Shown: positions 17,301 through 57,400 of the stretch, one piece after another
How positions within the stretch are numbered: position 1 is the first letter of the stretch
Layout: each line of letters starts with the position of its first letter
Origin: Magallana gigas
Taxonomy: Eukaryota
DNA length: 64,000 bases
Direction of reading: 5' to 3'
Assembly (NCBI RefSeq): GCF_963853765.1
Contig: NC_088859.1
Location: forward strand, 2,294,001-2,358,000
Program-made: the position numbers and the translations under genes
The notes under the pieces: model-generated
The model's input: the letters and a program-made list of their open reading frames with translations, nothing else
What the model was told of the DNA's origin: nothing
Databases searched by the model: none

Positions 17301-20300
17301 ACAGTTTATGAGGATGGAATACTCCTGAGGTCAGGCAACAGTCTGAGGAATGCCAGGATGTTAACGGAGAGACAAAATGTAAAGAACAGAAGATCCCTGC
17401 AAGCTCTGAACACCAACAAGAATGCGAGGGAGGTCCGGCGATCCCTACACTCTGTCAACACAATGGAGGACTCCAGATTGTCCCGCAGCACAACACGGGG
17501 TTCCAGATCCCGGAGATCCCAGGCCTCGGACTACGTCACCAGTACAAACCGAATAACCGAGACAGCATCATCCTCGGCCTCTATGTCATCTTATACGTCG
17601 TCGTCAAAATCATCTGTCTTAGAACCAGTCCGGAAAACTCTCATCAGGGAGTTTGATGATCTGGAAATGGAGAAAGGAATGAAAGAAATTCAGAACTCCA
17701 ACAGAAAAATCAAGTTATATGGTACAGTTATCTCTGAATGAGTCTTTACATATTGTAAAACCATTGGACAGTGCATCATTATTTAAATTTCGACATCCTA
17801 TTTGTGAAAAGGTCCTTTTTCAGATTAATTAGATGAAAATGTATTGTCCAATACCTTCTTAAAGATTATAACAATAACTTTTTTTATCTTTTAAGGTCTA
17901 GATCAGGTGGACTCTGATGAAATGTCTGGTATGTGACTTTATCCTAGAAACAATATGTTCCTCAATGATTTTTTTTTTTTTTATAAGGATTTTATTCATG
18001 ATTTATTGTTATACAGTCGTAAATGGTGTATTTAAAGTTTGCAATGGGATTTTTTATTTATTATGACTTGCGCATGTATAGAAATATTTTGCGCTGTATA
18101 TCAGTACATGTAATAAATGAGTTGGATTTTACTTGTTTTGTAGGAATGGAATCAGAATCCGAGTTTACTGGTAAGTACTCTGAACTATCATAATTTTGAG
18201 GAGTAATTCAGATTAGAGAACTAGCTGTTTTCACTTTCTGTTCAAACATGAGAAGATTTGGGGTGTATGTGTTTCCAGGAACCAACATGTCTGGCTACCT
18301 CTCCAACTCCCGGTACAGTAGGAGCAGCCCCCGGAGGTCAAGGTCAGACACCACGACTTCTACCTCAGCATCAGACTCCTCTACTTCCATGGTCACCACG
18401 GTCACCACCACCGTAGTCACCACCATCATAGGTAAGTATACAGAGACCAGACTGTAAAAAGAATATGGAACTCAGATTGAATAAGAGCTGAAAGTCTATG
18501 TAATTCTGAATACCTGGAATGAATTAAATACTTTTCATGTACCTATATATAGTGAAACTTTGTTATCAAGTGAAGATTTCGTTTTAAATATAATACAATA
18601 TGATGAAACGTCATGTTCAAAAATGGTATTTAAAGTGTATTCAATTTTTTTCCCCATAGAAACCATCACCTCCACTGCAAGACCTGTGGCCCAGCCATTA
18701 TGGAACAATGTGGGACGACCCATGTGGACCAGTGTAGGCCGGCCGGTGTGGAACCGCGTGGGGGAGCCAGCATGGCAGTACCTGGGTAGACCTGTGTGGC
18801 GGTACCTGGTCAGACCGGTCTGTTCACTGACCATCAGCCTATTGTCGGTGGCACTCTTGATGCTGTACCATCTGATCTGGACGTACTGTCTGCGACACAT
18901 TGTCAAAGCTTGTATGTTTGTGACCAGAAAAACGCTGTCCACTGCACGAGCCGTCGTAGTAAAAATGGTTGTTTGGGAAGTTGGACTTTTCTCAAGGTAA
19001 TAACTGTAGATTCCTAGTTAAATGTGAGGAATTAATTTCTGCGTAAAATCACAAAAAGCAACCCTCGTTGATTTTAAAATCTTGCTTTTAATTTTAAGAC
19101 AGTTTTGAACTGTAGGAAATTATAACAAAAAATTGGTGATTGTGATTTTATATTCTAGCAATTTGATACAAAACAGCAGAATTGCAGAATTAGGTGATCG
19201 CGTAAAATAAAGAATTTACAATAAGTTTTTCTTGAAAAATGAATATGGGATTTAAGTCATAGAAAATATACAAGATATTTGAATGAAACAGATATGTGTT
19301 CTGTTGTTGTCACAATATAAGGAAGAGACCTTTAAATGGTACTTCCCTGAAGCAATATGTTACATGTATGTGATATTTACCATACATGAATAAATGAATG
19401 ATTTTTTTCTAAAAGAATATGAAGAGAAATATGGGACTGTGTTTAGCAATCTGTTACAGATATGTACATCTGTATGACTTGTTTGTTACAGAATGTCCAG
19501 GCTTTCCCGTCTGTGCTGTATCATCTTGCCATTGATGCTTTTGTTGCCATTATTGTTTTATGCAGGTAAATATTTGTTTATAGATAAAATATTTGAGTTA
19601 ATAGCTATTAATTTTAAGCTTCGTAATATGACTATCAAGTAATTTATATCTCAGATAAAAAAAAAAGTATCCAAAGCAAACTAGATTGAATGTTTCACTG
19701 ATGAATCTCATTTGTGACATTCTAAATTATTGAAATTCTGGACTATATCTGTTGTCTCAGTTTAATTTGATCCTTTGTAAATGTATATGTTCAACAAACA
19801 TTTAAGTGAATATATTGACATTGTTGTATCATATATTTATAAGAAGTTAAGTCTTTATTTTTTTTAGCTTCCCCATTTGTGATGCATTCCAACTTGATGG
19901 AGATGTGGAGGGAGAGGACATATGGAGAGATTTCAGGGGTAAAAATCTTAACCACTAAAGGTTTTCTTTGCTCACTGAGATAAAGTCGGGGAAGCTTATG
20001 CTATACCCTATGGCTTGGCATCCGGACTATGCTTTTTACATAAAATGATTGGTAGTCTCATAAAAGTAATGCCTTGTCTCGGTGGGCTCTGTAATCTTTA
20101 ATTACCTAATTATGTTTTTTCAAGTAAGTTGAAAATATTTAGAGAAAATGAATTGGTACATGAGTACATGTATCGCTCTATCTTTTATCAGGTGGGCAAA
20201 GGGCTGAGTCCTCATGAGTTGAGAGAACATGTGAGAAGGATTGTCATACAGATTGACGAGGGCAGGGAACACTCCCTGTCGATGCCAGAGGTAGAGAGTA

Positions 20301-23300
20301 TCGTATCTACGATGGTGGAACAGCGACTGAATGAGGAAAAACTGGCCAATCAGAATCGCTGGTTGGAGGAGCAGGAGGCTGCTAAAAATGAGGTATATCA
20401 TTTCTTGCTGTGGTTATGGTGGTGTTGGGGTGTCTCTATGCACTGAACCTTTGCTAAATTGGTGACCTCACTGTATGCTTGAAATTTCTTTATAACACAC
20501 TAACTGGTAAATAACTGCTTTATCTTGCTTTGATTGAATGATGTACTTGAACATATAGTTGTAAGTTCCATTTAACATTTCATGTAGCTTAGGGATGCAC
20601 TAAGCAGTGTAAAAACTAATAGCAAAGAGGAAGAAAAAGATAGCCCTGTTGAAGACATCAACAAATCACGGATTAGTTCACAAGGACCAAAAGTACATGT
20701 AGATACTGAGGAACCAATAAACATTGATGAGGATTCTGGATTAGACATAAAGATCAACAAATCACATATAAGTTCACAAACACCTAAAGTACATGAACAT
20801 GTAGATACTGAGGAACCAATACACATCAAAGAGGATTCTGGAAAAGACATAAAGATCAATAAATCACATATAAGTTCACAAACACCTAAAGTAGATACAA
20901 AGAAACCAATACACATTGATGTGGGTTCTAGAGAAGATGTGAAGATCAACAAATCATCAGTCAGTTCTGGGACGCGTGACTTACATACAAGGGAGCCAGT
21001 TGACAATGATATGGATTCTGAAATAGATTTGGGGTGTGGGGGCCCTGAAATCTTGGACGCCCCGATGGATGATGGAGGAGTGTGTGAGGCACTTGATGTA
21101 CAGATCAGTGAGACGGACAGGACTGGGAGCCAAGGGACTGGGGGAACAATGGACGCTGGAGAATCTGAAGGCTCTCACGGAGTAGACACAGGAATAGCAG
21201 GACACACAGCCACAAGGAAACAGAGAGTTACCAGTGAACAAAAGCATGGAGATAATTCCACATCAATCACTGGTCACTCACAGAGCCCCTACAGGATCAG
21301 AGATATCTACAGAAACCTAATGCTTAATCCACGAAGAAGGTCAAGGTGTGAAAGGGTATCAAAGAAAGAGGTAAAGGTGAAGAAATCTGCCGGGAAGAAA
21401 CCTGTTAGAACGAGACCTGTACAACCCCACCTAGACAACATACTTGCTCCGCCTGTATGTAGTCCATTGCATCAGTTTCCTGTTCCAGTTGGTTGTTCAG
21501 ACCAGTGAAATTTGAGCTACATTTCCTTTTGGTTGCTTTTTCAAGTTAGCTTGCTTATATTTATTTTCAGTTCGTCTTTTTTTTTTTCAGGCATGCTTGT
21601 TAACATAATTTGATGATGTTTCTGTAATTGAATGTAATTTAATGCATCATGATATTTGTATTTTCTTGTTATTCAACAAGGTTTATGAATTAAGAAGGCT
21701 CACTACACCTAGAAATATTTTCTCAAATCAGCAGAAAATTACATGATTTTGATAGATATCATAATGGATAAGAAGTATTTAAGTTAAATAGGCAAAAAAT
21801 GTGCAATTTAGGATGAAAAATTACATTTATGAAAATTTAATTCTGTAAACATGAACAAAAGCTCCAGGCGGATTCGAACTCATGATCTGCGGTTCAGAAG
21901 CCCAATACTTTAACCACTGACCTACGAGGATATACAACCCAATCGAACTATATAAACAGTTTAACAAAACATTTAAATCGCCATCTTGTGACGTAGTGTC
22001 TTAAAAGGTATAAGTCTAGGTGTAGTGAGGTACCTTAAGATTTGTTTTATGTGTTTAATTTCATGTAACAAAATTTTTGTTATAATCTTTTATATTAAAG
22101 AGAGAGAAAAAATAATGTAATGATAAAAAAATCTCTTTAAATATACATGTATGTCTAACAGAGAAATAAAATTGTATGAGTTGTTAATGTAACATAATAT
22201 GTCATTCTTTTTACTGTAAATGTTAAATTAACAACCGGGATTGTTTTTGCAAAGGTGTCTAAATGCATAAGTTTGTGATAAATACAAAATATTTTAAAGT
22301 GCTGATGTTTTACTGTCTTTGTTAGATGGAGAGAACCAACCTTACTGAGGAGATCCTGAGGGTGCTGCAGCAGCTCAATGTGGGTGTGGGTGGGGGAACA
22401 GACACTCTGACCGAGGGAGATGTCAGAGCCATTGCCAGTCAGCTGGTGCAGCGGGAGGTCAGCGGGCTACAGGACAGAATCACTGAACAAACCCAGGCCA
22501 AGGTCAGTCCATCAGACAGCACTATGTTAGTGATTATATAGAAGCACATTTATTTTATGTTTTATACTTCAGTCCATTGCACTGTCAACATTATCAAAAT
22601 GATAAATACTGGTAAAAGCATAGGTATCCAATTTTATGTATTGTAAATTCCTTATTTCACATGAGTACTTAATTCCGCAATTCCACTGTTTTGTATCAGA
22701 TCACAAGAATATAAAATCACGATCACTAATTTTTTGTTTTAATTTCTCATTGTTCAAAACTGTCTGAAAAATAAAGACGAGATTTAAAAATTTGTAAGGG
22801 TTGCTTCTCGCGATTTTACATGGATATTAATTCCTTGCGTTTAATTAGGAATGTATAGTATTCTTCCTATAATGAGTATATATACACAATCAGTGACTCT
22901 ATTTAATGGATTTATTGTTCCTGAGCAGTGTTCTTGTATTTTCTCCCTCATGTTTAAAAGCTTTCTTTACTGTTTACAGATGTCAGGGAGTGGAGAACAA
23001 GAAGAAAGAATTCTTAATCTTCAGAATGATTTAAAAACCAGTATAGTGGTGAGTGGTGATGGTAAAACTTTGGAAACTGATATTTCATTAATATTCATTA
23101 GCATCAAATTAGTTCAGTTTGGTAAAATTCAATGTTTCAAGAATAGAATGATACATTGAAAAAAAAAGTTTACTGAACTAAAGACATTTCTAAGGTCTCA
23201 TTGTTTATGCTCCTGAAATTAGAATAGTTTTTTTTCCCCATTTAATATCTTTGACCTTGTCTTCTTTGCAGAATCTTGAACAAAAGTTGACAGATGAATT

Positions 23301-25898
23301 GGATAGAATGAAAAGGTTTGGATGGATATGTTATATATTTCATTTGATTTGCACGGAGAGCTCTGGTAGGATGTTTTTATTACCTTTTTCTATGATTTAA
23401 ATGTTTGATTTCTTTGGTTTTAGTGAATCTGTTCGTGGTGAGGGAGTGGGTGATGAAGCGTCGGCGGCCCTCCTACAGATACAGGAGGACCTGTCTTCTG
23501 TCCGCACCCGCCTAGACAGTCTGGAGCTAGAGAGGCAGTCACTGGCTGGACAGCTGAAGAACTGCTGCCGGAACGACAGCTTCTACACCAGCCTAGTACA
23601 GGATCGCATCAATCTGATCCTGGGACAGGTAGGTGTCCCGCTGACTGGGAAGGCTCTATCATTCTACAGGATTTGTTTGTTTTTTAAAACAGTATACCCA
23701 AGAATCTGTCTAGATATCCTTTGATGTATATCATATTTGATCTGACAGCAGATTTTAAACAAGTTACTTATGTTGACAGTAGACCCATTTTTAATTTTTC
23801 TAAGCTTGGAGACATTTCCTGTGATGTCTAAAAGTGATGTTTTCTATAGAATGTCCAGTCTAGCCTTGTGGTAATCATACCAATGTTTACAGATAATGTC
23901 TGGCAATGACTCCGGCAGTGCTGACCAGTACACGTTTGGGGCATGGTTGAAATCGACCTACATCAAGAAGAGTGACCTGGAGGAGTACATGGCAGAGTTC
24001 AGTCAGGGGCTGACGGAGAAAATCATGAAGGAAATCCCACAGGCAGAGGCGACAGAGGTCTACGTGTCGGAGTCAGGGGTACAAGGCAAAGTGACGGAGA
24101 TGGTGAGGACATTCAAAACAATTTATACATTTTATTCACATGATTTCATTAGGTTTTAATTTCTACATTCTATTAACAGTTGATTTGTTTTTTATTAAAA
24201 ATAATTGTTTGAAAGTTTCAAATTTTAAAACCATTAGAATTTGAAATATTACCAAAGAGTCACTCACAAGTGGTCTACTATTAAACCTGAACCACGTTTA
24301 CATCATCAATTCCTTCTCTCTAAAAAATCAGCTGTGTAGTTTTACAGACCATATACCGGTAATAATTGTACACTTGTTGTAATGTCTACAGGCTGTGAGA
24401 CAGATTGTGACAGAAGCTCTAGAGAAGTTCAGTGCTGACAAGATTGCCATGCCTGATTTTGCACTGGAGTCTGCTGGTTTGTATTTGTCCTTTCCTCCAG
24501 TATGAAATATGTTCATGACTGATTTCTCTTTAACTGTTGTTAATTTGTGTGTAGTGTAAACAAGACTCGAATGACCATAAGTCTGTCATTGCAGGAGGAA
24601 GCATCATCAGTACAAAGTGCTCGGAGACGTTCCACAAGAACACCGCTCGTCTGAGTATACTGGGGATTCCCCTGTGGTACGTCTCCAACTCCCCACGCAG
24701 TGTTATTCAGGTAAGTCCACACTGTGGCATGCTGGGTAAGCTTTGATGGCATCTGCAGTTTTATAGTAAGGGACAGTAATTTGTTTACTGTATTGGTATA
24801 TCAAATGTAAAGGAATATGGGAATTGTGTTAGACAGATGTTGATTTATCACATGTACAGGATATTTTAGAAAGTTTACATAAAACTTGTGAGGTATTCTA
24901 TCCTCTGATAATAGAGAAAACTTTCACATGGGTAAATGACTGTTATTCCTTTATAAATGTCCAAAGGGGATTTCTGTCAACCATTGTTCTGCAGGTTGTG
25001 CTGATATTTACATAAATGTACATTTTGTTATGTATAATGTTCTTTTTGAACTCAGTGTCACTGAAGCAAAATTTATAAATTGCAAAATTATGTTATACAA
25101 AGTGTCTATGAAGCACAAAGATGTGACAGATTTTGTAGAACTGTAAACCTTCAATCATGGTGTATTTTTTCTTCAACAGCCTGAGATGCAACCTGGCTCT
25201 TGTTGGGCCTTTCAGGGCAGTAGAGGTCACCTAGTGATCGAGCTGTCAGCCAATATCACCCCCACAGCCTTCACACTGGAGCACATCCCAAAGTCAATTG
25301 CTCCCGAGGGGAAAATTGATAGCGCCCCCAAAGAATTCACTGTTCTGGTATGTTATTAGAGACCAGATGATATTAACGGAAGAAAAACTTTAATTTTTTG
25401 CATATGATACTCCTCCACATATTTTGATTTGAAATCTTTGATTTGATGGATATTTTGAGTAAATGACATTGTATTTTCTTGGTGCAGGGTCTGAGTAATG
25501 AATTTGACACAGTGGGAAGTAACCTAGGTAATTTTACCTACAATGAGTCCGGGCCTCCTCTACAAACCTTCAGCATAAAGGTAACAAAATAGGTCACACA
25601 CCATACAACATGTATATATCATTATTTGCAGTATATGTGTAATCTTTGTCCACTCTCAAAGGTTGCAATATAGGTTGCACTTGATGCAGCATGTACATTG
25701 TATTTCAATTACCAGTACATGTATTTGTATATCCTTTGTTAACTGTCAACTGTTTCCTGTTTGTGATTTCAGAAACCAAACGTTGGAAACTACAAGTTTG
25801 TTCAACTGAGTGTTTTAGAAAACCATGGAAACCCGTTATATACATGCATCTATAGATTCAGGGTGCATGGAATTCCGTATAAACCAAAGAAAAAGTAG
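11319..25898 (+). CDS. SUN1: SUN-domain inner nuclear membrane protein (SUN1/SUN2 pro-orthologue), ~970 aa
   Basis: Exons 11319-11329, 13154-13246, 15656-15691, 16355-16521, 17305-17721, 17896-17928, 18144-18170, 18279-18431, 18660-18996, 19492-19565, 19868-19938, 20192-20392, 22326-22502, 22980-23048, 23272-23315, 23424-23628, 23893-24102, 24392-24476, 24595-24710, 25180-25347, 25488-25580, 25773-25898 (2913 nt, all GT-AG, in phase). N-terminal DYTYSRS...PNMSR resembles SUN1 YTYALS...PRMSRR; TM segment LCCIILPLMLLLPLLFYA; coiled coils; SUN domain ADKIAMPDFALESAGGSII, GIPLWY, QPGSCWAFQG, LEHIPK, SAPKEF, NHGNPLYTCIYRFRVHG. The first two exons are less certain (alternative start ATG at 15657). 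The symbol is a family label, not a 1:1 orthology claim. Confidence 0.92.
12170..12781. mobile_element. TTAA-flanked MITE (Kolobok-like termini AG..CT) in SUN intron 1
   Basis: Perfect 18-bp TIR agctgcttggtccgattt; TTAA at 12166-12169 and 12782-12785. Confidence 0.85.
20588..21508 (+). CDS. Candidate alternative (terminal or cassette) exon of the SUN gene; 306 codons, acidic/Ser-rich with 30-34 aa repeats
   Basis: Acceptor catgtag| at 20587 is phase 0, in frame with the upstream exon (..KNE|LRDALSSVK..). Frame is open to TGA 21506-21508; the supplied ORF 20921-21508 is its 3' part. Possible internal phase-0 donors at 21371 (GAG|gtaaag) and 21377. Confidence 0.55.
   Translation, partial: LRDALSSVKTNSKEEEKDSPVEDINKSRISSQGPKVHVDTEEPINIDEDSGLDIKINKSHISSQTPKVHEHVDTEEPIHIKEDSGKDIKINKSHISSQTPKVDTKKPIHIDVGSREDVKINKSSVSSGTRDLHTREPVDNDMDSEIDLGCGGPEILDAPMDDGGVCEALDVQISETDRTGSQGTGGTMDAGESEGSHGVDTGIAGHTATRKQRVTSEQKHGDNSTSITGHSQSPYRIRDIYRNLMLNPRRRSRCERVSKKEVKVKKSAGKKPVRTRPVQPHLDNILAPPVCSPLHQFPVPVGCSDQ
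21694..22034. mobile_element. TTAA-flanked MITE containing a tRNA-like cassette
   Basis: TIR core ctcactacacctaga (15 bp perfect); TTAA at 21690-21693 and 22035-22038; A-box/B-box-like sequence on the minus strand at 21861-21930. Confidence 0.7.
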
Positions 25899-26514
25899 AA
25901 AACAGACACATATCGCTACATGGCAGCAAAAACGTTTGAAATGGGGGAAAACGGTTTTCCCAAAATGATTTCTCCCGAGTGCATTTAATCAGGACTCTGT
26001 GATATAAACAATTCAAGGACTTTTATTTGTTTTAATGCCTTACCTTATGTTGAAGTTTACAAGGACTGACTAGGTACAGACTGTTTTATATTCTTCTGTT
26101 GACAGTTGTGAAGCACTGACTAAATATGGACGGTGTTGTTTTGTATTCTTCTGTTGAAGATAGATGTGCATAATTCTGACTCTGCTCGAGGAAGCTTACT
26201 CGTAACCACCAACGCTGTGTTCAGTTGTCGTCATGTTTTAATATTGTTAAATCATACATGTATATATATGTATATGCTGTTTATTTATGTACATTGTGTG
26301 AGATTTTGGTATTGTTAGTCTATATGCTGTTTATTTATGTATATGGTGTAAGATTTGGTATTGTTATGTCATATATGCTGTTTTTTAATGTGTATAGAGT
26401 ATGATAATTTTTCAAATCCTCAATATCAGGTAGTGTTTTTTACACAAGGATAGCAATTACTCAAATAATCAATGCATAGTATAAGTACAGAGCAGCTACA
26501 TGTAACTATGCTGG

Positions 26515-26848
26515 TTCATTAGGTAGATATACCTGGTTCATCAGATAGATATACCTGATTTATCAGGTAGGTATACCTGATTTATCAGGTAGGTATACCT
26601 GGTTTATCAGGTATATATACCTGGTTCATCATATAGATATACCTGGTTCATCAGATAGATATACCTGATTTGTCAGGTATATATACCTGGTTCATCAGAT
26701 AGATATGCCTGGTTTATCAGGTAAGTATACCTGGTTTATCAGGTATATATACCTGGTTCATCAGATAGATATACCTGATTTGTCAGGTATATATACCTGG
26801 TTCATCAGATAGATATACCTGGTTTATCAGGTAAGTATACCTGGTTCA
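26515..26848. repeat. 22-bp quasi-palindromic minisatellite (~15 copies) downstream of the SUN stop codon
   Basis: Unit tcaggta(g/t)(a/g)tatacctg(g/a)tt(c/t)a. Confidence 0.9.
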
Positions 26849-54493: not shown

Positions 54494-57400
54494 TCATAAT
54501 AAGCTTGTTCCCTGTAGCAATGTTTTAGTGTATTTTACCTCCTCTACTTGGCTGCTGCATATCCTGGGTTTGTCAAAGACCCTGGGGTCTTTAATTCCTG
54601 GTTCAATCCCTGTGTACCCAACAGTGGACATATACCCCATACCTGCAAAAATATATCATCTTCAGTATATAAACTGAATTCCTAAAGCAACATTCATTTA
54701 CTGAATCCCGATATATATAGTACATGTACAAGGAAACAATCATTACATAAAATAAACCCACGGTTTAGTTGGGGTTTACTCTGGTGTTAGGTTGGGTCTG
54801 ATCGGTACTGTAAAACCATATTTAGCATAATCTTCACAACATAATACCAGCATTCCATTTACTTTGTATTCCTTCTAATCGTACACTTTCGTTCCATAAG
54901 CGGCATCCCCCTTCCACTCGTGCTTACCACTCCTGGGGAGGGTCCCAGTGATGGTCTCCCCCACAGGGACACACAGCTTGTTAGTGATGGTGAAGTAGCT
55001 GTTCCCTCCGATGCGTTTGCGGGCCATCTGGTACACGGTGACATCCAGGCTGTCATCAGCTGTCCCCATGTGTGTATCACTGACCGCCTTGGCTTCCTCT
55101 AAAAACAGAATCTTAATATAATCATGTTTCTGTCACAGCCATGGCTTCCACTAATGTACACAACAAGCTGCTATGTATTTATTTATTCCATCTCAAAGCA
55201 TTATCATCAGCATCTTCCCAAGTCAAGGGTTTCTGATCCGCATAGCTTCTTGTGAGAAGCTATGCGGATCAGAAACCCTTGACTTGGGAAGATGTATCAT
55301 CAGCTGACAGGGAAACATTAATTTGATCCCCCCACTCCCCCCCCCCCCCATTATGTAATCAGAAATAAATGGCTTTGAGTTTTATCATAGAATATGGTAG
55401 ATAAAGGTTAATCATTTAGCACTGGATCCATTGTAAATCATTCAACAAATTTTTTCTATCTTTCATTATAAATTATGATCACTCTTACAATTTGAGATGA
55501 GGCACATATTAGACCTTTATGAGCTGTGAGTACCAGAACTGTTTTGGAGAAGGAGAGTACTGTTTGTTAAAAATCTCTAAAAATACATTAAATATCGTGG
55601 ATAAGTGTTCTCTACAAAATGAGCATGCTGATTTAAATTTGCAAAAGATGATTCTGGGGTATGTGAACACAGGTATAACAGTCCAACCTGGTACCGGGTA
55701 TATTTACCATTCTTACCTGATACACAGGTATAAATATATATATGTCTTACCTGGCAAAGAGGTATATTTATCAGTCTTACCTGGTTCACAGGTATATTTA
55801 TCAGCCTTACCTATCAGCCTTACCTGGTTCACAGGTATATTTATCAGTCTTACCTGGTTCACAGGTATATGTATCAGTCTTACCTGGTTCACAGGTATAT
55901 TTATCAGTCTTACCTGGTTCACAGGTATATTTATCAGTCTTACCTGGCACACAGGTATATTTATCAGCCTTACCTGGTTCACAGGTATATTTATCAGTCT
56001 TACCTGGTTCACAGGTATATGTATCAGTCTTACCTGGTTCACAGGTATATGTATCAGTCTTACCTGGTTCACAGGTACATGTATCAGCCTTACCTGGTTC
56101 ACAGGTATATTTATCAGTCTTACCTGGTTCACAGGTATATTTATCAGCCTTACCTGGTTCACAGGTATATTTATCAGCCTTACCTGGTTCACAGGTATAT
56201 TTATCAGCCTTACCTGGCACACAGGTATATGTATCAGTCTTACCTGGCACACAGGTATATATATATATCAGTCTTACCTGGTTCACAGGTATATTTATCA
56301 GCCTTACCTGGTTCACAGGTATATTTATCAGTCTTACCTGGTTCACAGGTATATTTATCAGCCTTACCTGGCACACAGGTATATATATATATCAGTCTTA
56401 CCTGGTTCACAGGTATATTTCTCAGCCTTACCTGGTTCACAGGTATATTTATCAGTCTTACCTGGTTCACAGGTATATTTATCAGCCTTACCTGGTTCAC
56501 AGGTATATTTATCAGCCTTACCTGGTTCACAGGTATATTTATCAGCCTTACCTGGTTCACAGGTATATTTATCAGCCTTACCTGGCACACAGGTATATGT
56601 ATCAGTCTTACCTGGCACACAGGTATATATATATATCAGTCTTACCTGGTTCACAGGTATATACATTACTGCAGTATGTAAGTTTTACCTGGAATGCAGG
56701 CCTCCTTGAATTCCTTTTGACTCAGTCGGGTAGTGTTACAATGTCCATCCATGAACGTGTACTGAACTCCCTGAAAAACAAAGCATATGCAGCCATCTTA
56801 GATTCACAGGGCACAGACTTTCTACTTGGAACTACTCCGACATCCTCGACAATAAATTTATTGAACAGAGCACGGTGGAGTCACTTCCAAAGCCAGCTGA
56901 GGATTGTGGATTGCAGACTTTCATGTACAGCTCCATATTTAACAGAGCTGACCAAAACATGCAATTGCTAGGTAACTTTAAGGTACTCTGGATAACAATG
57001 GAGTTTTCCACTTCCTTATCAATACTGTAGATTCATTTTTTTACATGAGTACTCAACTTTAGGATCCCGCCGTTTTGTATCAAATCGCAAGAATATAAAA
57101 TCGCGAACACAGACTTTTAATTCTTTATTACAGCTCTCAAATCTCAGAAAATAATAGTGAGATTTTACAATCAATGAGGGGTGCTTTTCATGATTTTATG
57201 CGGATGTTATAATTTCTTGCATTTAGTAAGGAATCTACACCACTAAAGGTAGTGATCCTTTTCACTAATATTTTTTATTTGAATAAATAGTTAGATTAAC
57301 AAGGTTATTCAATAATTTATTAGTATACATATATTTACCTGGATTGGATGGTATAGGCCTATATAATATCAAAATTTCTTCAATTCTGTTGATACATACT

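What the first reader, a model, noticed from the sequence alone, without database searches (positions are those of the whole stretch)
20588..21508. Hidden in-frame 306-codon exon could give a SUN-domain-less or luminally extended LINC isoform
Seen: inside the intron after the exon ending ..AAKNE, a phase-0 acceptor opens a stop-free 921-nt frame. It encodes about 3.3 copies of a 30-34 aa repeat (DIKINKSHISSQTPKV..VDTEEPIHIxEDSG), an acidic Gly/Ser tract and a basic tail. Phase-0 donors at 21371/21377 could rejoin the exon at 22326. Known: SUN proteins bind KASH proteins through the luminal C-terminal SUN domain, and the luminal stalk spans the perinuclear space. Inference: either (a) a terminal exon giving a membrane-anchored protein without most of the coiled coil and without the SUN domain (a natural LINC decoy), or (b) a ~260-aa spacer lengthening the luminal stalk. 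It may be germ-line specific.
Basis: partly seen in the sequence, partly recalled or inferred. Interest (0 to 1): 0.72.

Follow-up and report, generated by a model that had tools for sequence, protein, structure and literature searches.

The report
Transcribed open frame in oyster SUN intron
An intron of an oyster SUN (nuclear-envelope bridge) gene holds a real, single-copy, transcribed 306-codon open frame, but the RNA data show it only as an unspliced run-on from the preceding exon, so a SUN-less transcript is shown while translation of the frame itself is not.

Summary
Window 20588-21508 (+) is a stop-free 306-codon frame with about 4 diverged 30-34 aa repeats, an acidic tract and a basic tail. 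It lies in the 1,933-nt intron between SUN-gene exons 20192-20392 and 22326-22502, in phase with both.

It is not chance and not a repeat:
- The other five frames carry 5-32 stops.
- GC is 0.43, against 0.23-0.35 in the flanking intron.
- It is single-copy in the genome, with no Pfam family and no homologue found.

It is transcribed on the sense strand in several studies, at roughly 10-30% of the depth of neighbouring exons, while other introns read 0. Neither proposed junction (20392->20588, 21370/21376->22326) appeared in four runs. RNA contigs run unbroken from the exon end through 20393-20587, which has six in-frame stops, and past the proposed donors to 21436-21586.

Twelve haplotypes keep the frame open: 83 SNPs with no stop, and only 102- and 108-nt indels. 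Synonymous changes are in modest excess in 20588-21370 (P about 0.008).

Best reading: an alternative 3'-terminal run-on that gives a SUN-less transcript (shown). The frame is translated only if the 195-nt mini-intron is removed (inferred, not seen). The cassette model is not supported.

The parts
19492..19565 (+). SUN-gene exon encoding the hydrophobic transmembrane segment (..LCCIILPLMLLLPLLFYA)
   Evidence: RNA joint to 19868 in X5/X6/X9. Acceptor and donor read; translation.
19868..19938 (+). SUN-gene luminal exon
   Evidence: Joints 19565->19868 and 19938->20192 with GT..AG ends in RNA contigs; in frame.
20192..20392 (+). SUN-gene luminal exon ending ..EEQEAAKNE (..AKQE in the common allele), phase 0. 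Its donor is GAG|GTATAT in the window and GAG|GTAAAA in most alleles.
   Evidence: Constitutive joint 20392->22326 in X21 (4 raw reads), X5, X9 and, as the Q allele, X6. Polymorphism is 10 synonymous to 6 non-synonymous. Alleles are shown.
20393..20587 (+). 195-nt stretch between the exon end and the open frame. It is GT..AG bounded and holds six in-frame stops, the first at 20444-20446. It is retained in all RNA contigs seen and is a candidate mini-intron.
   Evidence: Translation. Contigs X6 rec 8 and X9 rec 14 (from 20381) and X5 rec 2 (from 20420) run through it unbroken. 20567-20592 is invariant in 13 alleles.
20588..21508 (+). The 306-codon open frame plus TGA (342 codons in the common allele). 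It has about four 30-34 aa repeats, each with an N-K-S sequon, then an acidic tract and a basic tail.
   Evidence: Single copy. Open in 12 haplotypes with 83 SNPs and no stop. RNA depth is 3-39, against 33-199 on exons.
20695..20893 (+). 102-nt tandem repeat core, 2 copies at 92% identity. One unit is missing in allele L010 and in the RNA contigs of X5, X6 and X9.
   Evidence: 102-nt skips. L010 deletion.
21024..21025 (+). Site of a 108-nt (36-codon, acidic GESQLDMEES...) in-frame segment. It is present in all 12 other contigs and absent from the window haplotype.
   Evidence: The record arithmetic of X6 rec 8 and X9 rec 14 also gives +108.
21371..21505 (+). Tail of the frame after the two donor-like sites. 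It shows no coding signal and unusually high diversity.
   Evidence: 4 synonymous to 13 non-synonymous changes; pi 0.046, against 0.019 in 20588-21370. RNA contigs continue through it to 21436, 21459 and 21586.
21509..21696 (+). Unique sequence after the stop. It is still in RNA at least to 21586, and to 21784 if L014 is an RNA contig. There is no AATAAA or ATTAAA.
   Evidence: X5 rec 3 ends at 21586. L014 spans 20363-21784. Hexamer scan.
21697..22038 (.). High-copy 342-nt interspersed element that hides the 3' end of the run-on RNA.
   Evidence: At least 2,087 candidate copies, with full-length copies at 91-94% identity. RNA depth is in the thousands, with loose ends at both borders.
22326..22502 (+). 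Next constitutive SUN-gene exon (MERTNLTEEIL..), the start of the long luminal coiled-coil region.
   Evidence: Joints 20392->22326 and 22502->22980; translation.
25186..25356 (+). Exon of the C-terminal SUN (Sad1_UNC) domain, which identifies the host gene.
   Evidence: Pfam PF07738, E 3.5e-16, 59.9 bits against a cut-off of 22.

Best explanation
Window 20393 to at least 21586 is an alternative 3'-terminal run-on of SUN-gene exon 20192-20392.

Shown:
- In roughly 10-30% of transcripts, judged by contig depth, the donor at 20392 is not used.
- The RNA then continues on the sense strand for at least 1.2 kb. It appears to end before the last part of the intron.
- These RNAs cannot encode the SUN domain or most of the luminal coiled coil. 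Their product would be the nucleoplasmic N-terminus, the transmembrane segment and about 90 luminal residues.
- As observed, with 20393-20587 retained, the product ends 17 residues after AAKNE (VYHFLLWLWWCWGVSMH).

Inferred, not seen:
- In a fraction of these RNAs the GT..AG-bounded 195-nt mini-intron is removed.
- That would join AAKNE in phase to the 306-residue frame (342 residues in the common allele).
- The added tail would be lineage-specific, disordered, acidic-repeat and then basic, lying in the perinuclear lumen, with one N-x-S sequon per repeat.
- This is the simplest way to account for the frame staying open and showing mild purifying selection although it has no start codon of its own.
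For: - Transcription: seven runs on record as RNA, from several studies, hold 73-83% of the frame's sampled words.
- Depth: 3-6 in the frame against 33 on exons (X5), 36 against 133-199 (X6), 39 against 117-149 (X9). Four other intron bins read 0 in all runs, so this is not DNA carry-over.
- Strand: the few X21 raw reads on the frame have the same mate orientation as the SUN exons.
- Coding-like sequence: 0 stops against 5-32 in the other frames, and exon-like GC. GC1 > GC2 > GC3.
- Frame kept open: 83 SNPs with none making a stop (P 0.015), and the only indels are 102 and 108 nt.
- Synonymous excess in 20588-21370: 24 observed against 16.3 expected when SNPs are re-placed keeping their trinucleotide context (P 0.008; jointly with no stop, 0.0007). 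The shifted frames gave fewer synonymous changes and several stop-making variants.
- No own start: there is no in-frame ATG before codon 142, yet the N-terminal part shows 10 synonymous to 14 non-synonymous changes.
- Acceptor: TAG 20585-20587 and its surroundings (20567-20592) are invariant in 13 alleles.
- Phase: fits at 20392|20588.
- Not a repeat: single copy, with no paralogue.
Against: - No read or contig shows 20392->20588. Contigs in three runs, and L014, cross 20588 unbroken, so any spliced form is rarer than the unspliced one there.
- No called protein of 61-535 aa in the 5.8-billion-protein collection joins upstream exon sequence to the frame.
- The selection signal is modest. For the whole frame the synonymous excess gives P 0.067. 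Nucleotide diversity in the frame (0.019) is no lower than in the flanking intron (0.013-0.020). The last 45 codons look neutral.
- GC3 is 0.34, against 0.63 in the host's exons.
- No homologue in any other species was found. No poly(A) signal or 3' end was located.
- A polybasic tail is unusual for a luminal segment.
Confidence: 0.5

Rival explanations
1. The run-on RNA is the whole story. The donor at 20392 is skipped and translation stops at 20444-20446. The 306 codons are untranslated 3' UTR, and their openness is left over from an older coding past or from a repeat-rich, stop-poor composition.
For: - Every RNA contig seen keeps 20393-20587 with its six stops, and no junction into the frame was found.
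- Diversity in the frame is not reduced relative to the flanks, and the tail looks neutral.
- GC3 matches the intron background.
- There is no homologue and no predicted fold: mean pLDDT 42 from a single-sequence model.
Against: - 0 of 83 SNPs make a stop (P 0.015). There are no frameshifting indels in 1,026 nt across 12 haplotypes, while the flanks carry 1-8-nt indels.
- Synonymous changes are in excess in 20588-21370 (P 0.008) in this frame only.
- Chance openness is about 1e-6 or less.
Confidence: 0.3
2. The frame is a cassette exon (20588-21370 or 20588-21376) included between the two constitutive exons in some tissue. It would lengthen the luminal stalk by 261-263 residues, or 297-299 in the common allele, while the SUN domain is kept.
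For: - Both ends are in phase, with good donor-like sites (GAG|GTAAAG, AAG|GTGAAG).
- The coding signal is confined to 20588-21370. The 45 codons after the donors look neutral and are twice as diverse.
Against: - No 21370/21376->22326 joint and no 20392->20588 joint was seen in four runs, although the constitutive joint is seen in all.
- Contigs cross both donors unbroken to 21436-21586.
- Two of 12 haplotypes weaken the first donor (G>A at -1).
- No longer protein holding the frame turned up in the length-unrestricted search. That search also missed the frame's own cluster, so this counts for little.
Confidence: 0.1
3. A separate small gene is nested in the intron. Only the part from the first in-frame ATG (about 21009, MDSEID...) would be translated, as a 165-residue protein (201 in the common allele) that is acidic and then basic.
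For: - In X5 the depth of the 3' half (5.9) is higher than that of the 5' half (3.3).
- The polybasic tail looks like a nuclear-localisation signal, which would suit a soluble nuclear protein better than a luminal tail (the NLS reading is my own knowledge).
Against: - The 141 codons upstream of that ATG are also open in all haplotypes, with 10 synonymous to 14 non-synonymous changes.
- RNA contigs are continuous from the SUN exon end.
- The apparent 'MQLRD' start in proteins P0006, P0010 and P0013 is an artefact: the gene caller read TAG as Q. All 13 alleles have ATG TAG.
Confidence: 0.05
4. The frame is a recently abandoned exon. It was spliced in an ancestor and is no longer used, and it has not yet had time to decay.
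For: - Splice-like sites are intact and in phase, yet no junction is detectable.
- The constraint signal is weak and the tail looks neutral.
Against: The polymorphism sampled is deep (pi about 2%), so it already reflects a long period. Over that period no stop or frameshift has arisen in 12 haplotypes.
Confidence: 0.05

Closest known systems
Laboratory construct HA-Sun1-deltaL of mouse Sun1 (Crisp et al. 2006, PMC2063530)
   Same: [quoted passage not shown] This is the architecture that the oyster run-on transcript would encode. The paper reports that the construct still localises to the nuclear envelope, and that overexpressed Sun1 displaces Sun2.
   Different: It is an engineered truncation, not a natural isoform. 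It has no added repeat tail, and its effects were seen on overexpression. Nothing here shows that the oyster protein is made or is stable.
Composite terminal exons made by intronic polyadenylation or 5' splice-site read-through (general mechanism; my own knowledge)
   Same: A donor is skipped, the exon runs on into the intron, the transcript ends inside the intron, and a C-terminally truncated protein with a short intron-encoded tail results. This matches the coverage pattern.
   Different: No cleavage site or canonical poly(A) signal was located, because a high-copy element hides the 3' end. The run-on also contains a long frame that stays open and is in phase with the exon, which ordinary cases lack.
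Natural SUN1 splice variants and short testis SUN proteins of mammals (SUN1 isoforms, SUN3, SPAG4/SUN4, SUN5; my own knowledge, with the reviews listed)
   Same: The SUN gene family does diversify by alternative transcripts and by tissue-specific short forms.
   Different: The known SUN1 variants differ in the nucleoplasmic part, and all of these proteins keep the SUN domain. The oyster variant would change or truncate the luminal part and would lose the SUN domain.

Membership tests
SUN-domain (Sad1/UNC-84) inner-nuclear-membrane protein gene (host gene) | C-terminal Sad1_UNC domain | tested here: met
   PF07738 on window 25186-25356: E 3.5e-16, 59.9 bits against a cut-off of 22.
SUN-domain (Sad1/UNC-84) inner-nuclear-membrane protein gene (host gene) | A transmembrane segment upstream of a long luminal region that leads to the SUN domain | tested here: met
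   The spliced translation from the RNA joints reads ..LCCIILPLMLLLPLLFYA.., followed by about 400 residues of charged, heptad-like sequence. This was read by eye; no TM predictor was run.
SUN-domain (Sad1/UNC-84) inner-nuclear-membrane protein gene (host gene) | Binds KASH peptides in the perinuclear space | not testable with these tools
   Needs biochemistry.
Cassette (internal alternative) exon | Junction reads at both ends (20392->20588 and 21370/21376->22326) | tested here: not met
   Neither joint was found in one raw poly(A) run or in the contigs of three RNA runs. The constitutive joint is seen in all four. Contigs can drop rare forms and the raw run was shallow.
Cassette (internal alternative) exon | Length and phase keep the downstream frame | tested here: met
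   783 or 789 nt, phase 0 at both ends.
Alternative 3'-terminal exon / intronic polyadenylation isoform | RNA coverage that continues from the upstream exon into the intron and stops before the next exon | tested here: met
   Contigs run from 20381 to 21436-21586. Depth is 0 at 22088-22251 and in the other introns. A hole in contig data is weak evidence on its own.
Alternative 3'-terminal exon / intronic polyadenylation isoform | A mapped cleavage/poly(A) site with a signal hexamer | tested here: inconclusive
   There is no AATAAA or ATTAAA between 21400 and 22093, and no pile-up of read ends. The stretch 21697-22038 is masked by a high-copy element.
   No such joint was seen, and the 195 nt are retained in all contigs.
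Protein-coding sequence under purifying selection | Excess of synonymous over non-synonymous polymorphism in the frame, and no disabling alleles | tested here: met
   Across the whole frame there are 28 synonymous, 55 non-synonymous and 0 stop changes (no-stop P 0.015; synonymous excess P 0.067). In 20588-21370 there are 24 synonymous changes against 16.3 expected (P 0.008). There are no frameshifting indels. The signal is modest and absent in the last 45 codons.
Protein-coding sequence under purifying selection | Conserved homologues in other species | tested here: inconclusive
   The only hits are near-identical Logan contigs. No mollusc genome collection was available. The representative search also failed to return the frame's own cluster, so its blank means little.
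Transposable element or other dispersed repeat | Many copies in the genome | tested here: not met
   There is one DNA match and one six-frame protein match, both to itself, in the 564-Mb assembly.

The most novel reading that the evidence does not exclude
An oyster SUN gene has acquired a young, lineage-specific coding exon with no homologue anywhere. It would be a glycosylatable acidic-repeat tail with a basic end. Used as an alternative last exon after removal of a 195-nt mini-intron, it would make a natural SUN-less, membrane-anchored isoform with a 306-342-residue luminal tail. That protein would be a built-in modulator of LINC-complex assembly, possibly stage- or tissue-specific.
Probability: 0.4. 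Interest if true: 0.6.

Novelty: new variant of a known kind. Interest (0 to 1): 0.42.

Why it matters
Natural SUN isoforms that lose the SUN domain but keep the nuclear-envelope anchor are not part of the standard picture of LINC complexes. Truncations of this kind are used in the laboratory as probes. A transcript of this type at 10-30% of the gene's output would offer a natural way to tune nucleus-cytoskeleton coupling. If the open frame is translated, it would also be a clear case of a young orphan exon grafted onto an ancient gene. The case is also instructive for the scan: the phase-compatible splice sites looked convincing in raw sequence, yet the RNA shows a run-on rather than the proposed splices.

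Tried and rejected
- **Independent ORF starting at ATG 20582.** Three collection proteins begin 'MQLRD..'. All 13 alleles read ATG TAG, the loci do not translate to those proteins, and the Q is a recoded TAG. Rejected.
- **Repeat or transposon origin.** The frame is single-copy by DNA search and by six-frame protein search. Rejected.
- **Known domain or RNA family.** Pfam gave nothing and Rfam gave nothing meaningful.
- **Fold.** The single-sequence AlphaFold2 model has mean pLDDT 42 and no fold. This fits disorder but is weak evidence, so no fold search was run.
- **Homologues.**
  - HMMER against 1.84 billion representatives gave one spurious repeat hit at E 6e-4.
  - The word-index search gave one cluster of near-identical Logan contigs.
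  - The N-terminal 111 residues alone gave nothing.
- **Junction-bearing contigs.**
  - All 12 Logan contigs fetched run colinear with the genome and show no splice. Eleven look genomic.
  - L014 starts exactly 30 nt before the donor, as an RNA-derived k=31 contig would, but its library type could not be checked.
- **JGI metagenome contigs.** A scan for the exon end found nothing, so that collection does not hold this animal.
- **Allele-specific read-through.** Both donor haplotypes (GTATAT and GTAAAA) appear in unspliced contigs. Rejected.
- **Lower diversity in the frame than in the flanks.** Not seen.
Full report
**1. The observation**

Window 20588-21505 (+) translates without a stop for 306 codons and ends at TGA 21506-21508. 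It begins directly after TAG 20585-20587.

The frame holds about four diverged units of 30-34 residues (D[IV]KINKS.. ..EEPIHI.EDSG). TRF reports the two best units as a 102-nt period at 92% identity. After the repeats come an acidic Gly/Ser-rich tract and a basic tail. Net charge is -19 for residues 1-235 and +12 for residues 236-306.

The frame is not a chance product:
- The other five frames of the same stretch carry 19, 32, 18, 5 and 18 stops.
- GC is 0.43, against 0.23-0.35 in the unique intron around it and 0.50 in the neighbouring exon.
- From the stretch's own trinucleotide content, an open frame of this length has a probability of about 2e-8. It is about 1e-6 if two repeat copies are discounted.

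**2. The host gene and the position of the frame**

The exon at 25186-25356 matches Pfam Sad1_UNC (PF07738, E 3.5e-16). The gene ends about 25.9 kb into the window.

RNA joints define these exons:
- 19492-19565, the hydrophobic membrane segment
- 19868-19938
- 20192-20392
- 22326-22502
- 22980-23048, and further exons downstream

The frame lies in the 1,933-nt intron after exon 20192-20392, about 90 residues on the luminal side of the membrane segment.
- 20392 ends a codon and 20588 starts one.
- GAG|GTAAAG (21370|21371) and AAG|GTGAAG (21376|21377) are phase-0 donor-like sites.
- 22326 starts a codon.

**3. It is not a repeat, a known domain or a known RNA**

| Test | Result |
|---|---|
| DNA search of the 564-Mb assembly | only the frame itself |
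| Six-frame protein search of the assembly | only the frame itself |
| Pfam | nothing |
| Rfam | nothing meaningful |
| HMMER against 1.84 billion representatives | one spurious repeat hit, E 6e-4 |
| Word-index search of 5.8 billion proteins | one cluster of 20 near-identical proteins from Logan contigs, 231 or 344 aa |
| AlphaFold2, single sequence, common allele | mean pLDDT 42, no fold |

The representative search also failed to return the frame's own cluster, so its blank carries little weight. The low-confidence model fits a disordered polypeptide, but it is weak evidence on its own.

**4. RNA evidence (with runs)**

Seven runs on record as RNA, from several studies, hold 73-83% of the frame's sampled words. 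Reads or contigs of four runs were laid on 19300-24200.

(a) The constitutive joint 20392->22326 is present in all four runs. It appears as 4 raw reads in X21 and as contigs in X5, X9 and X6, the last in the AAKQE allele.

(b) No joint 20392->20588 and no joint 21370/21376->22326 is listed for any run.

(c) RNA contigs cover the frame and continue unbroken into the sequence upstream of it.

| Run, record | Covers | Contig depth | Depth on neighbouring exons |
|---|---|---|---|
| X6 rec 8 | 20381-21459 | 35.6 | 133-199 |
| X9 rec 14 | 20381-21436 | 39.2 | 117-149 |
| X5 rec 2 and 3 | 20420-21586 | 3.3-5.9 | 33 |

(d) Bins inside the other introns (19628-19791, 19956-20119, 23072-23235) read 0 in every run. 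So does the last unique part of this intron (22088-22251). The signal is therefore neither DNA carry-over nor general pre-mRNA.

(e) The few X21 raw reads on the frame have the same mate orientation as the SUN exons, so the RNA is in sense.

The 195 nt between exon and frame have six in-frame stops, the first at 20444-20446. The observed RNA therefore encodes ..AAKNE plus 17 residues, and the long frame sits in its 3' UTR.

The contigs also pass both donor-like sites without a break. Contigs drop minor paths and the raw run was shallow, with about two reads on the frame. A spliced form rarer than the unspliced one therefore cannot be excluded.

The 3' end was not found:
- There is no AATAAA or ATTAAA between 21400 and 22093.
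- The stretch 21697-22038 is a 342-nt element with at least 2,087 candidate copies, and its reads swamp the signal.

**5. Haplotypes**

Twelve Logan contigs were fetched (L002-L011, L013, L014). All are colinear with the genome, introns included.
- All carry 108 extra nt (36 codons, GESQLDMEES...) at 21024/21025. The window haplotype therefore has a private in-frame deletion, and the common frame is 342 codons.
- One contig (L010) lacks one 102-nt repeat unit. The RNA contigs of X6 and X9 show both indels and the X5 contig shows the 102-nt skip, and they stay in frame.
- All 13 alleles read ATG TAG at 20582-20587. The 344-aa proteins that start 'MQLRD' arise because the gene caller read TAG as Q. 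They are not an allele with a start codon.
- No indel of a length other than 102 or 108 nt occurs in the frame. The non-coding parts of the same alignment carry indels of 1-8 nt.
- The acceptor-like region 20567-20592 is invariant. The first donor-like site has G>A at position -1 in two haplotypes.

**6. Test for coding constraint**

With 12 distinct haplotypes the frame has 83 SNPs: 28 synonymous, 55 non-synonymous and none making a stop. The null model re-placed each SNP at a random site with the same trinucleotide context.

| Region | Synonymous : non-synonymous | Expected synonymous | P (synonymous excess) | P (no stop) | Joint P |
|---|---|---|---|---|---|
| Whole frame | 28 : 55 | 22.4 ± 3.4 | 0.067 | 0.015 | 0.002 |
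| 20588-21370 | 24 : 42 | 16.3 ± 2.9 | 0.008 | 0.049 | 0.0007 |
| 21371-21505 | 4 : 13 | 5.7 | none | - | - |
| True exon 20192-20392 | 10 : 6 | - | - | - | - |

Other points from these tests:
- The two shifted frames give fewer synonymous changes (18-20) and 6-7 stop-making variants.
- The part upstream of the first in-frame ATG (codon 142) shows 10 synonymous to 14 non-synonymous changes in the first sample.
- The last 45 codons have pi 0.046, against 0.019 in the main part.
- Overall diversity in the frame is not lower than in the flanks (0.013-0.020).
- The split at 21370 was chosen after seeing the data.

The signal points to mild purifying selection on this frame, far weaker than on the neighbouring exon. 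It is not beyond doubt. GC1 > GC2 > GC3 (0.52/0.42/0.34) is coding-like, but GC3 is at intron level while the host exons have 0.63.

**7. Interpretation**

Shown:
- An alternative RNA of the SUN gene ignores the donor at 20392 and runs on for at least 1.2 kb.
- It makes up roughly 10-30% of the local transcript depth in three independent data sets.
- It cannot encode the SUN domain.

Inferred:
- The frame has no start codon of its own. It stays open in all haplotypes, shows a frame-specific synonymous excess, and is in phase with the exon across a GT..AG-bounded 195-nt stretch.
- The simplest route to translation is removal of that mini-intron in part of the run-on RNAs. This would give a SUN-less protein with a 306-342-residue disordered luminal tail, with one N-K-S sequon per repeat.
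- I give this 0.5.

Rivals:
- Untranslated 3' UTR: 0.3. It fits all the RNA data but not the polymorphism pattern.
It fits the neutral-looking tail but no RNA observation.
- Nested small gene from ATG 21009: about 0.05.
- Recently abandoned exon: about 0.05.

**8. Comparison with what is known**

The nearest described object is an engineered one. [quoted passage not shown] In the same paper, overexpressed Sun1 displaces Sun2 (Crisp et al. 2006, PMC2063530).

By mechanism, the RNA looks like a composite terminal exon made by donor read-through or intronic polyadenylation (my own knowledge). The poly(A) site is unmapped.

The known natural SUN1 variants change the nucleoplasmic part, and the short testis SUN proteins keep the SUN domain (my own knowledge). 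This would therefore be a new variant of a known kind, not a new kind.

'Decoy' is only loosely apt. Without a SUN domain the protein cannot bind KASH. It could compete only for nucleoplasmic partners or for places in the membrane.

**9. Verdict**

The SUN-less outcome is supported at RNA level. The proposed splice junctions and the spacer model are not.
- Interest is moderate (0.42).
- The decisive data are junction counts in deep raw reads and full-length cDNA.

Noticed in passing
window 21697-22038: A 342-nt interspersed element with inverted ends (GGCTCACTACACCTAGA.. / ..TCTAGGTGTAGTGAGGTACC) and a tRNA-like piece on the minus strand (about 21860-21940) that ARAGORN does not call. The genome has at least 2,087 candidate copies, with full-length copies at 91-94% identity. 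RNA contig depth is in the thousands, on both strands in the raw run.
   Followed up: partly
window 21024/21025: The assembled haplotype lacks a 108-nt (36-codon) acidic segment that all 12 other public contigs carry. X6 and X9 contig arithmetic also gives +108, and X5's contigs break at the same place. The deletion is bounded by a short direct repeat (..AGAT).
   Followed up: yes
window 20375-20400; L013 around its position 222: The end of the constitutive exon is polymorphic: ..AAKNE, ..AAKQE or ..ETAKQE. The donor is GTATAT or GTAAAA. One allele (L013) has a 4-nt AGGT duplication that creates two tandem donors.
   Followed up: partly
proteins P0006, P0010, P0013 (loci L003-L005): The public protein collection holds 344-aa 'proteins' that start MQ... 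Their Q is a TAG stop read as glutamine by the gene caller, and the loci do not translate to them under the standard code. This could mislead anyone looking for start codons.
   Followed up: yes
window 22688-22907: A second stretch in the next intron is shared with abundant RNAs from elsewhere. It has sharp loose ends at 22688 and 22718 with near-perfect consensus flanks. Depth is up to 1,756, and the raw reads lie mostly on the opposite orientation to the SUN gene.
   Followed up: no
window 20393-20443: The 17-residue run-on tail (VYHFLLWLWWCWGVSMH) is strikingly hydrophobic and Trp-rich. It differs at only three positions (2, 11 and one silent change) among 13 alleles. Whether it matters for the truncated protein is unknown.
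   Followed up: no
(not a window place): The HMMER search of the 50%-identity representatives did not return the frame's own cluster (P0002 and its members), although the 90% collection holds it. Blanks from that library should therefore be read with care for Logan-only proteins.
   Followed up: no
window 26480-26860: Just downstream of the SUN gene's stop there is a tandem array of units of about 20-40 nt (..CCTGGTT[CT]ATCAG[AG]TAG[AG]TATA..).
   Followed up: no
window 55513-56968: The only stop-free stretches in the window longer than the studied frame (398 and 416 codons, + strand) lie here. They overlap the splice-site-like array noted by the scan as s1-369130.
   Followed up: no
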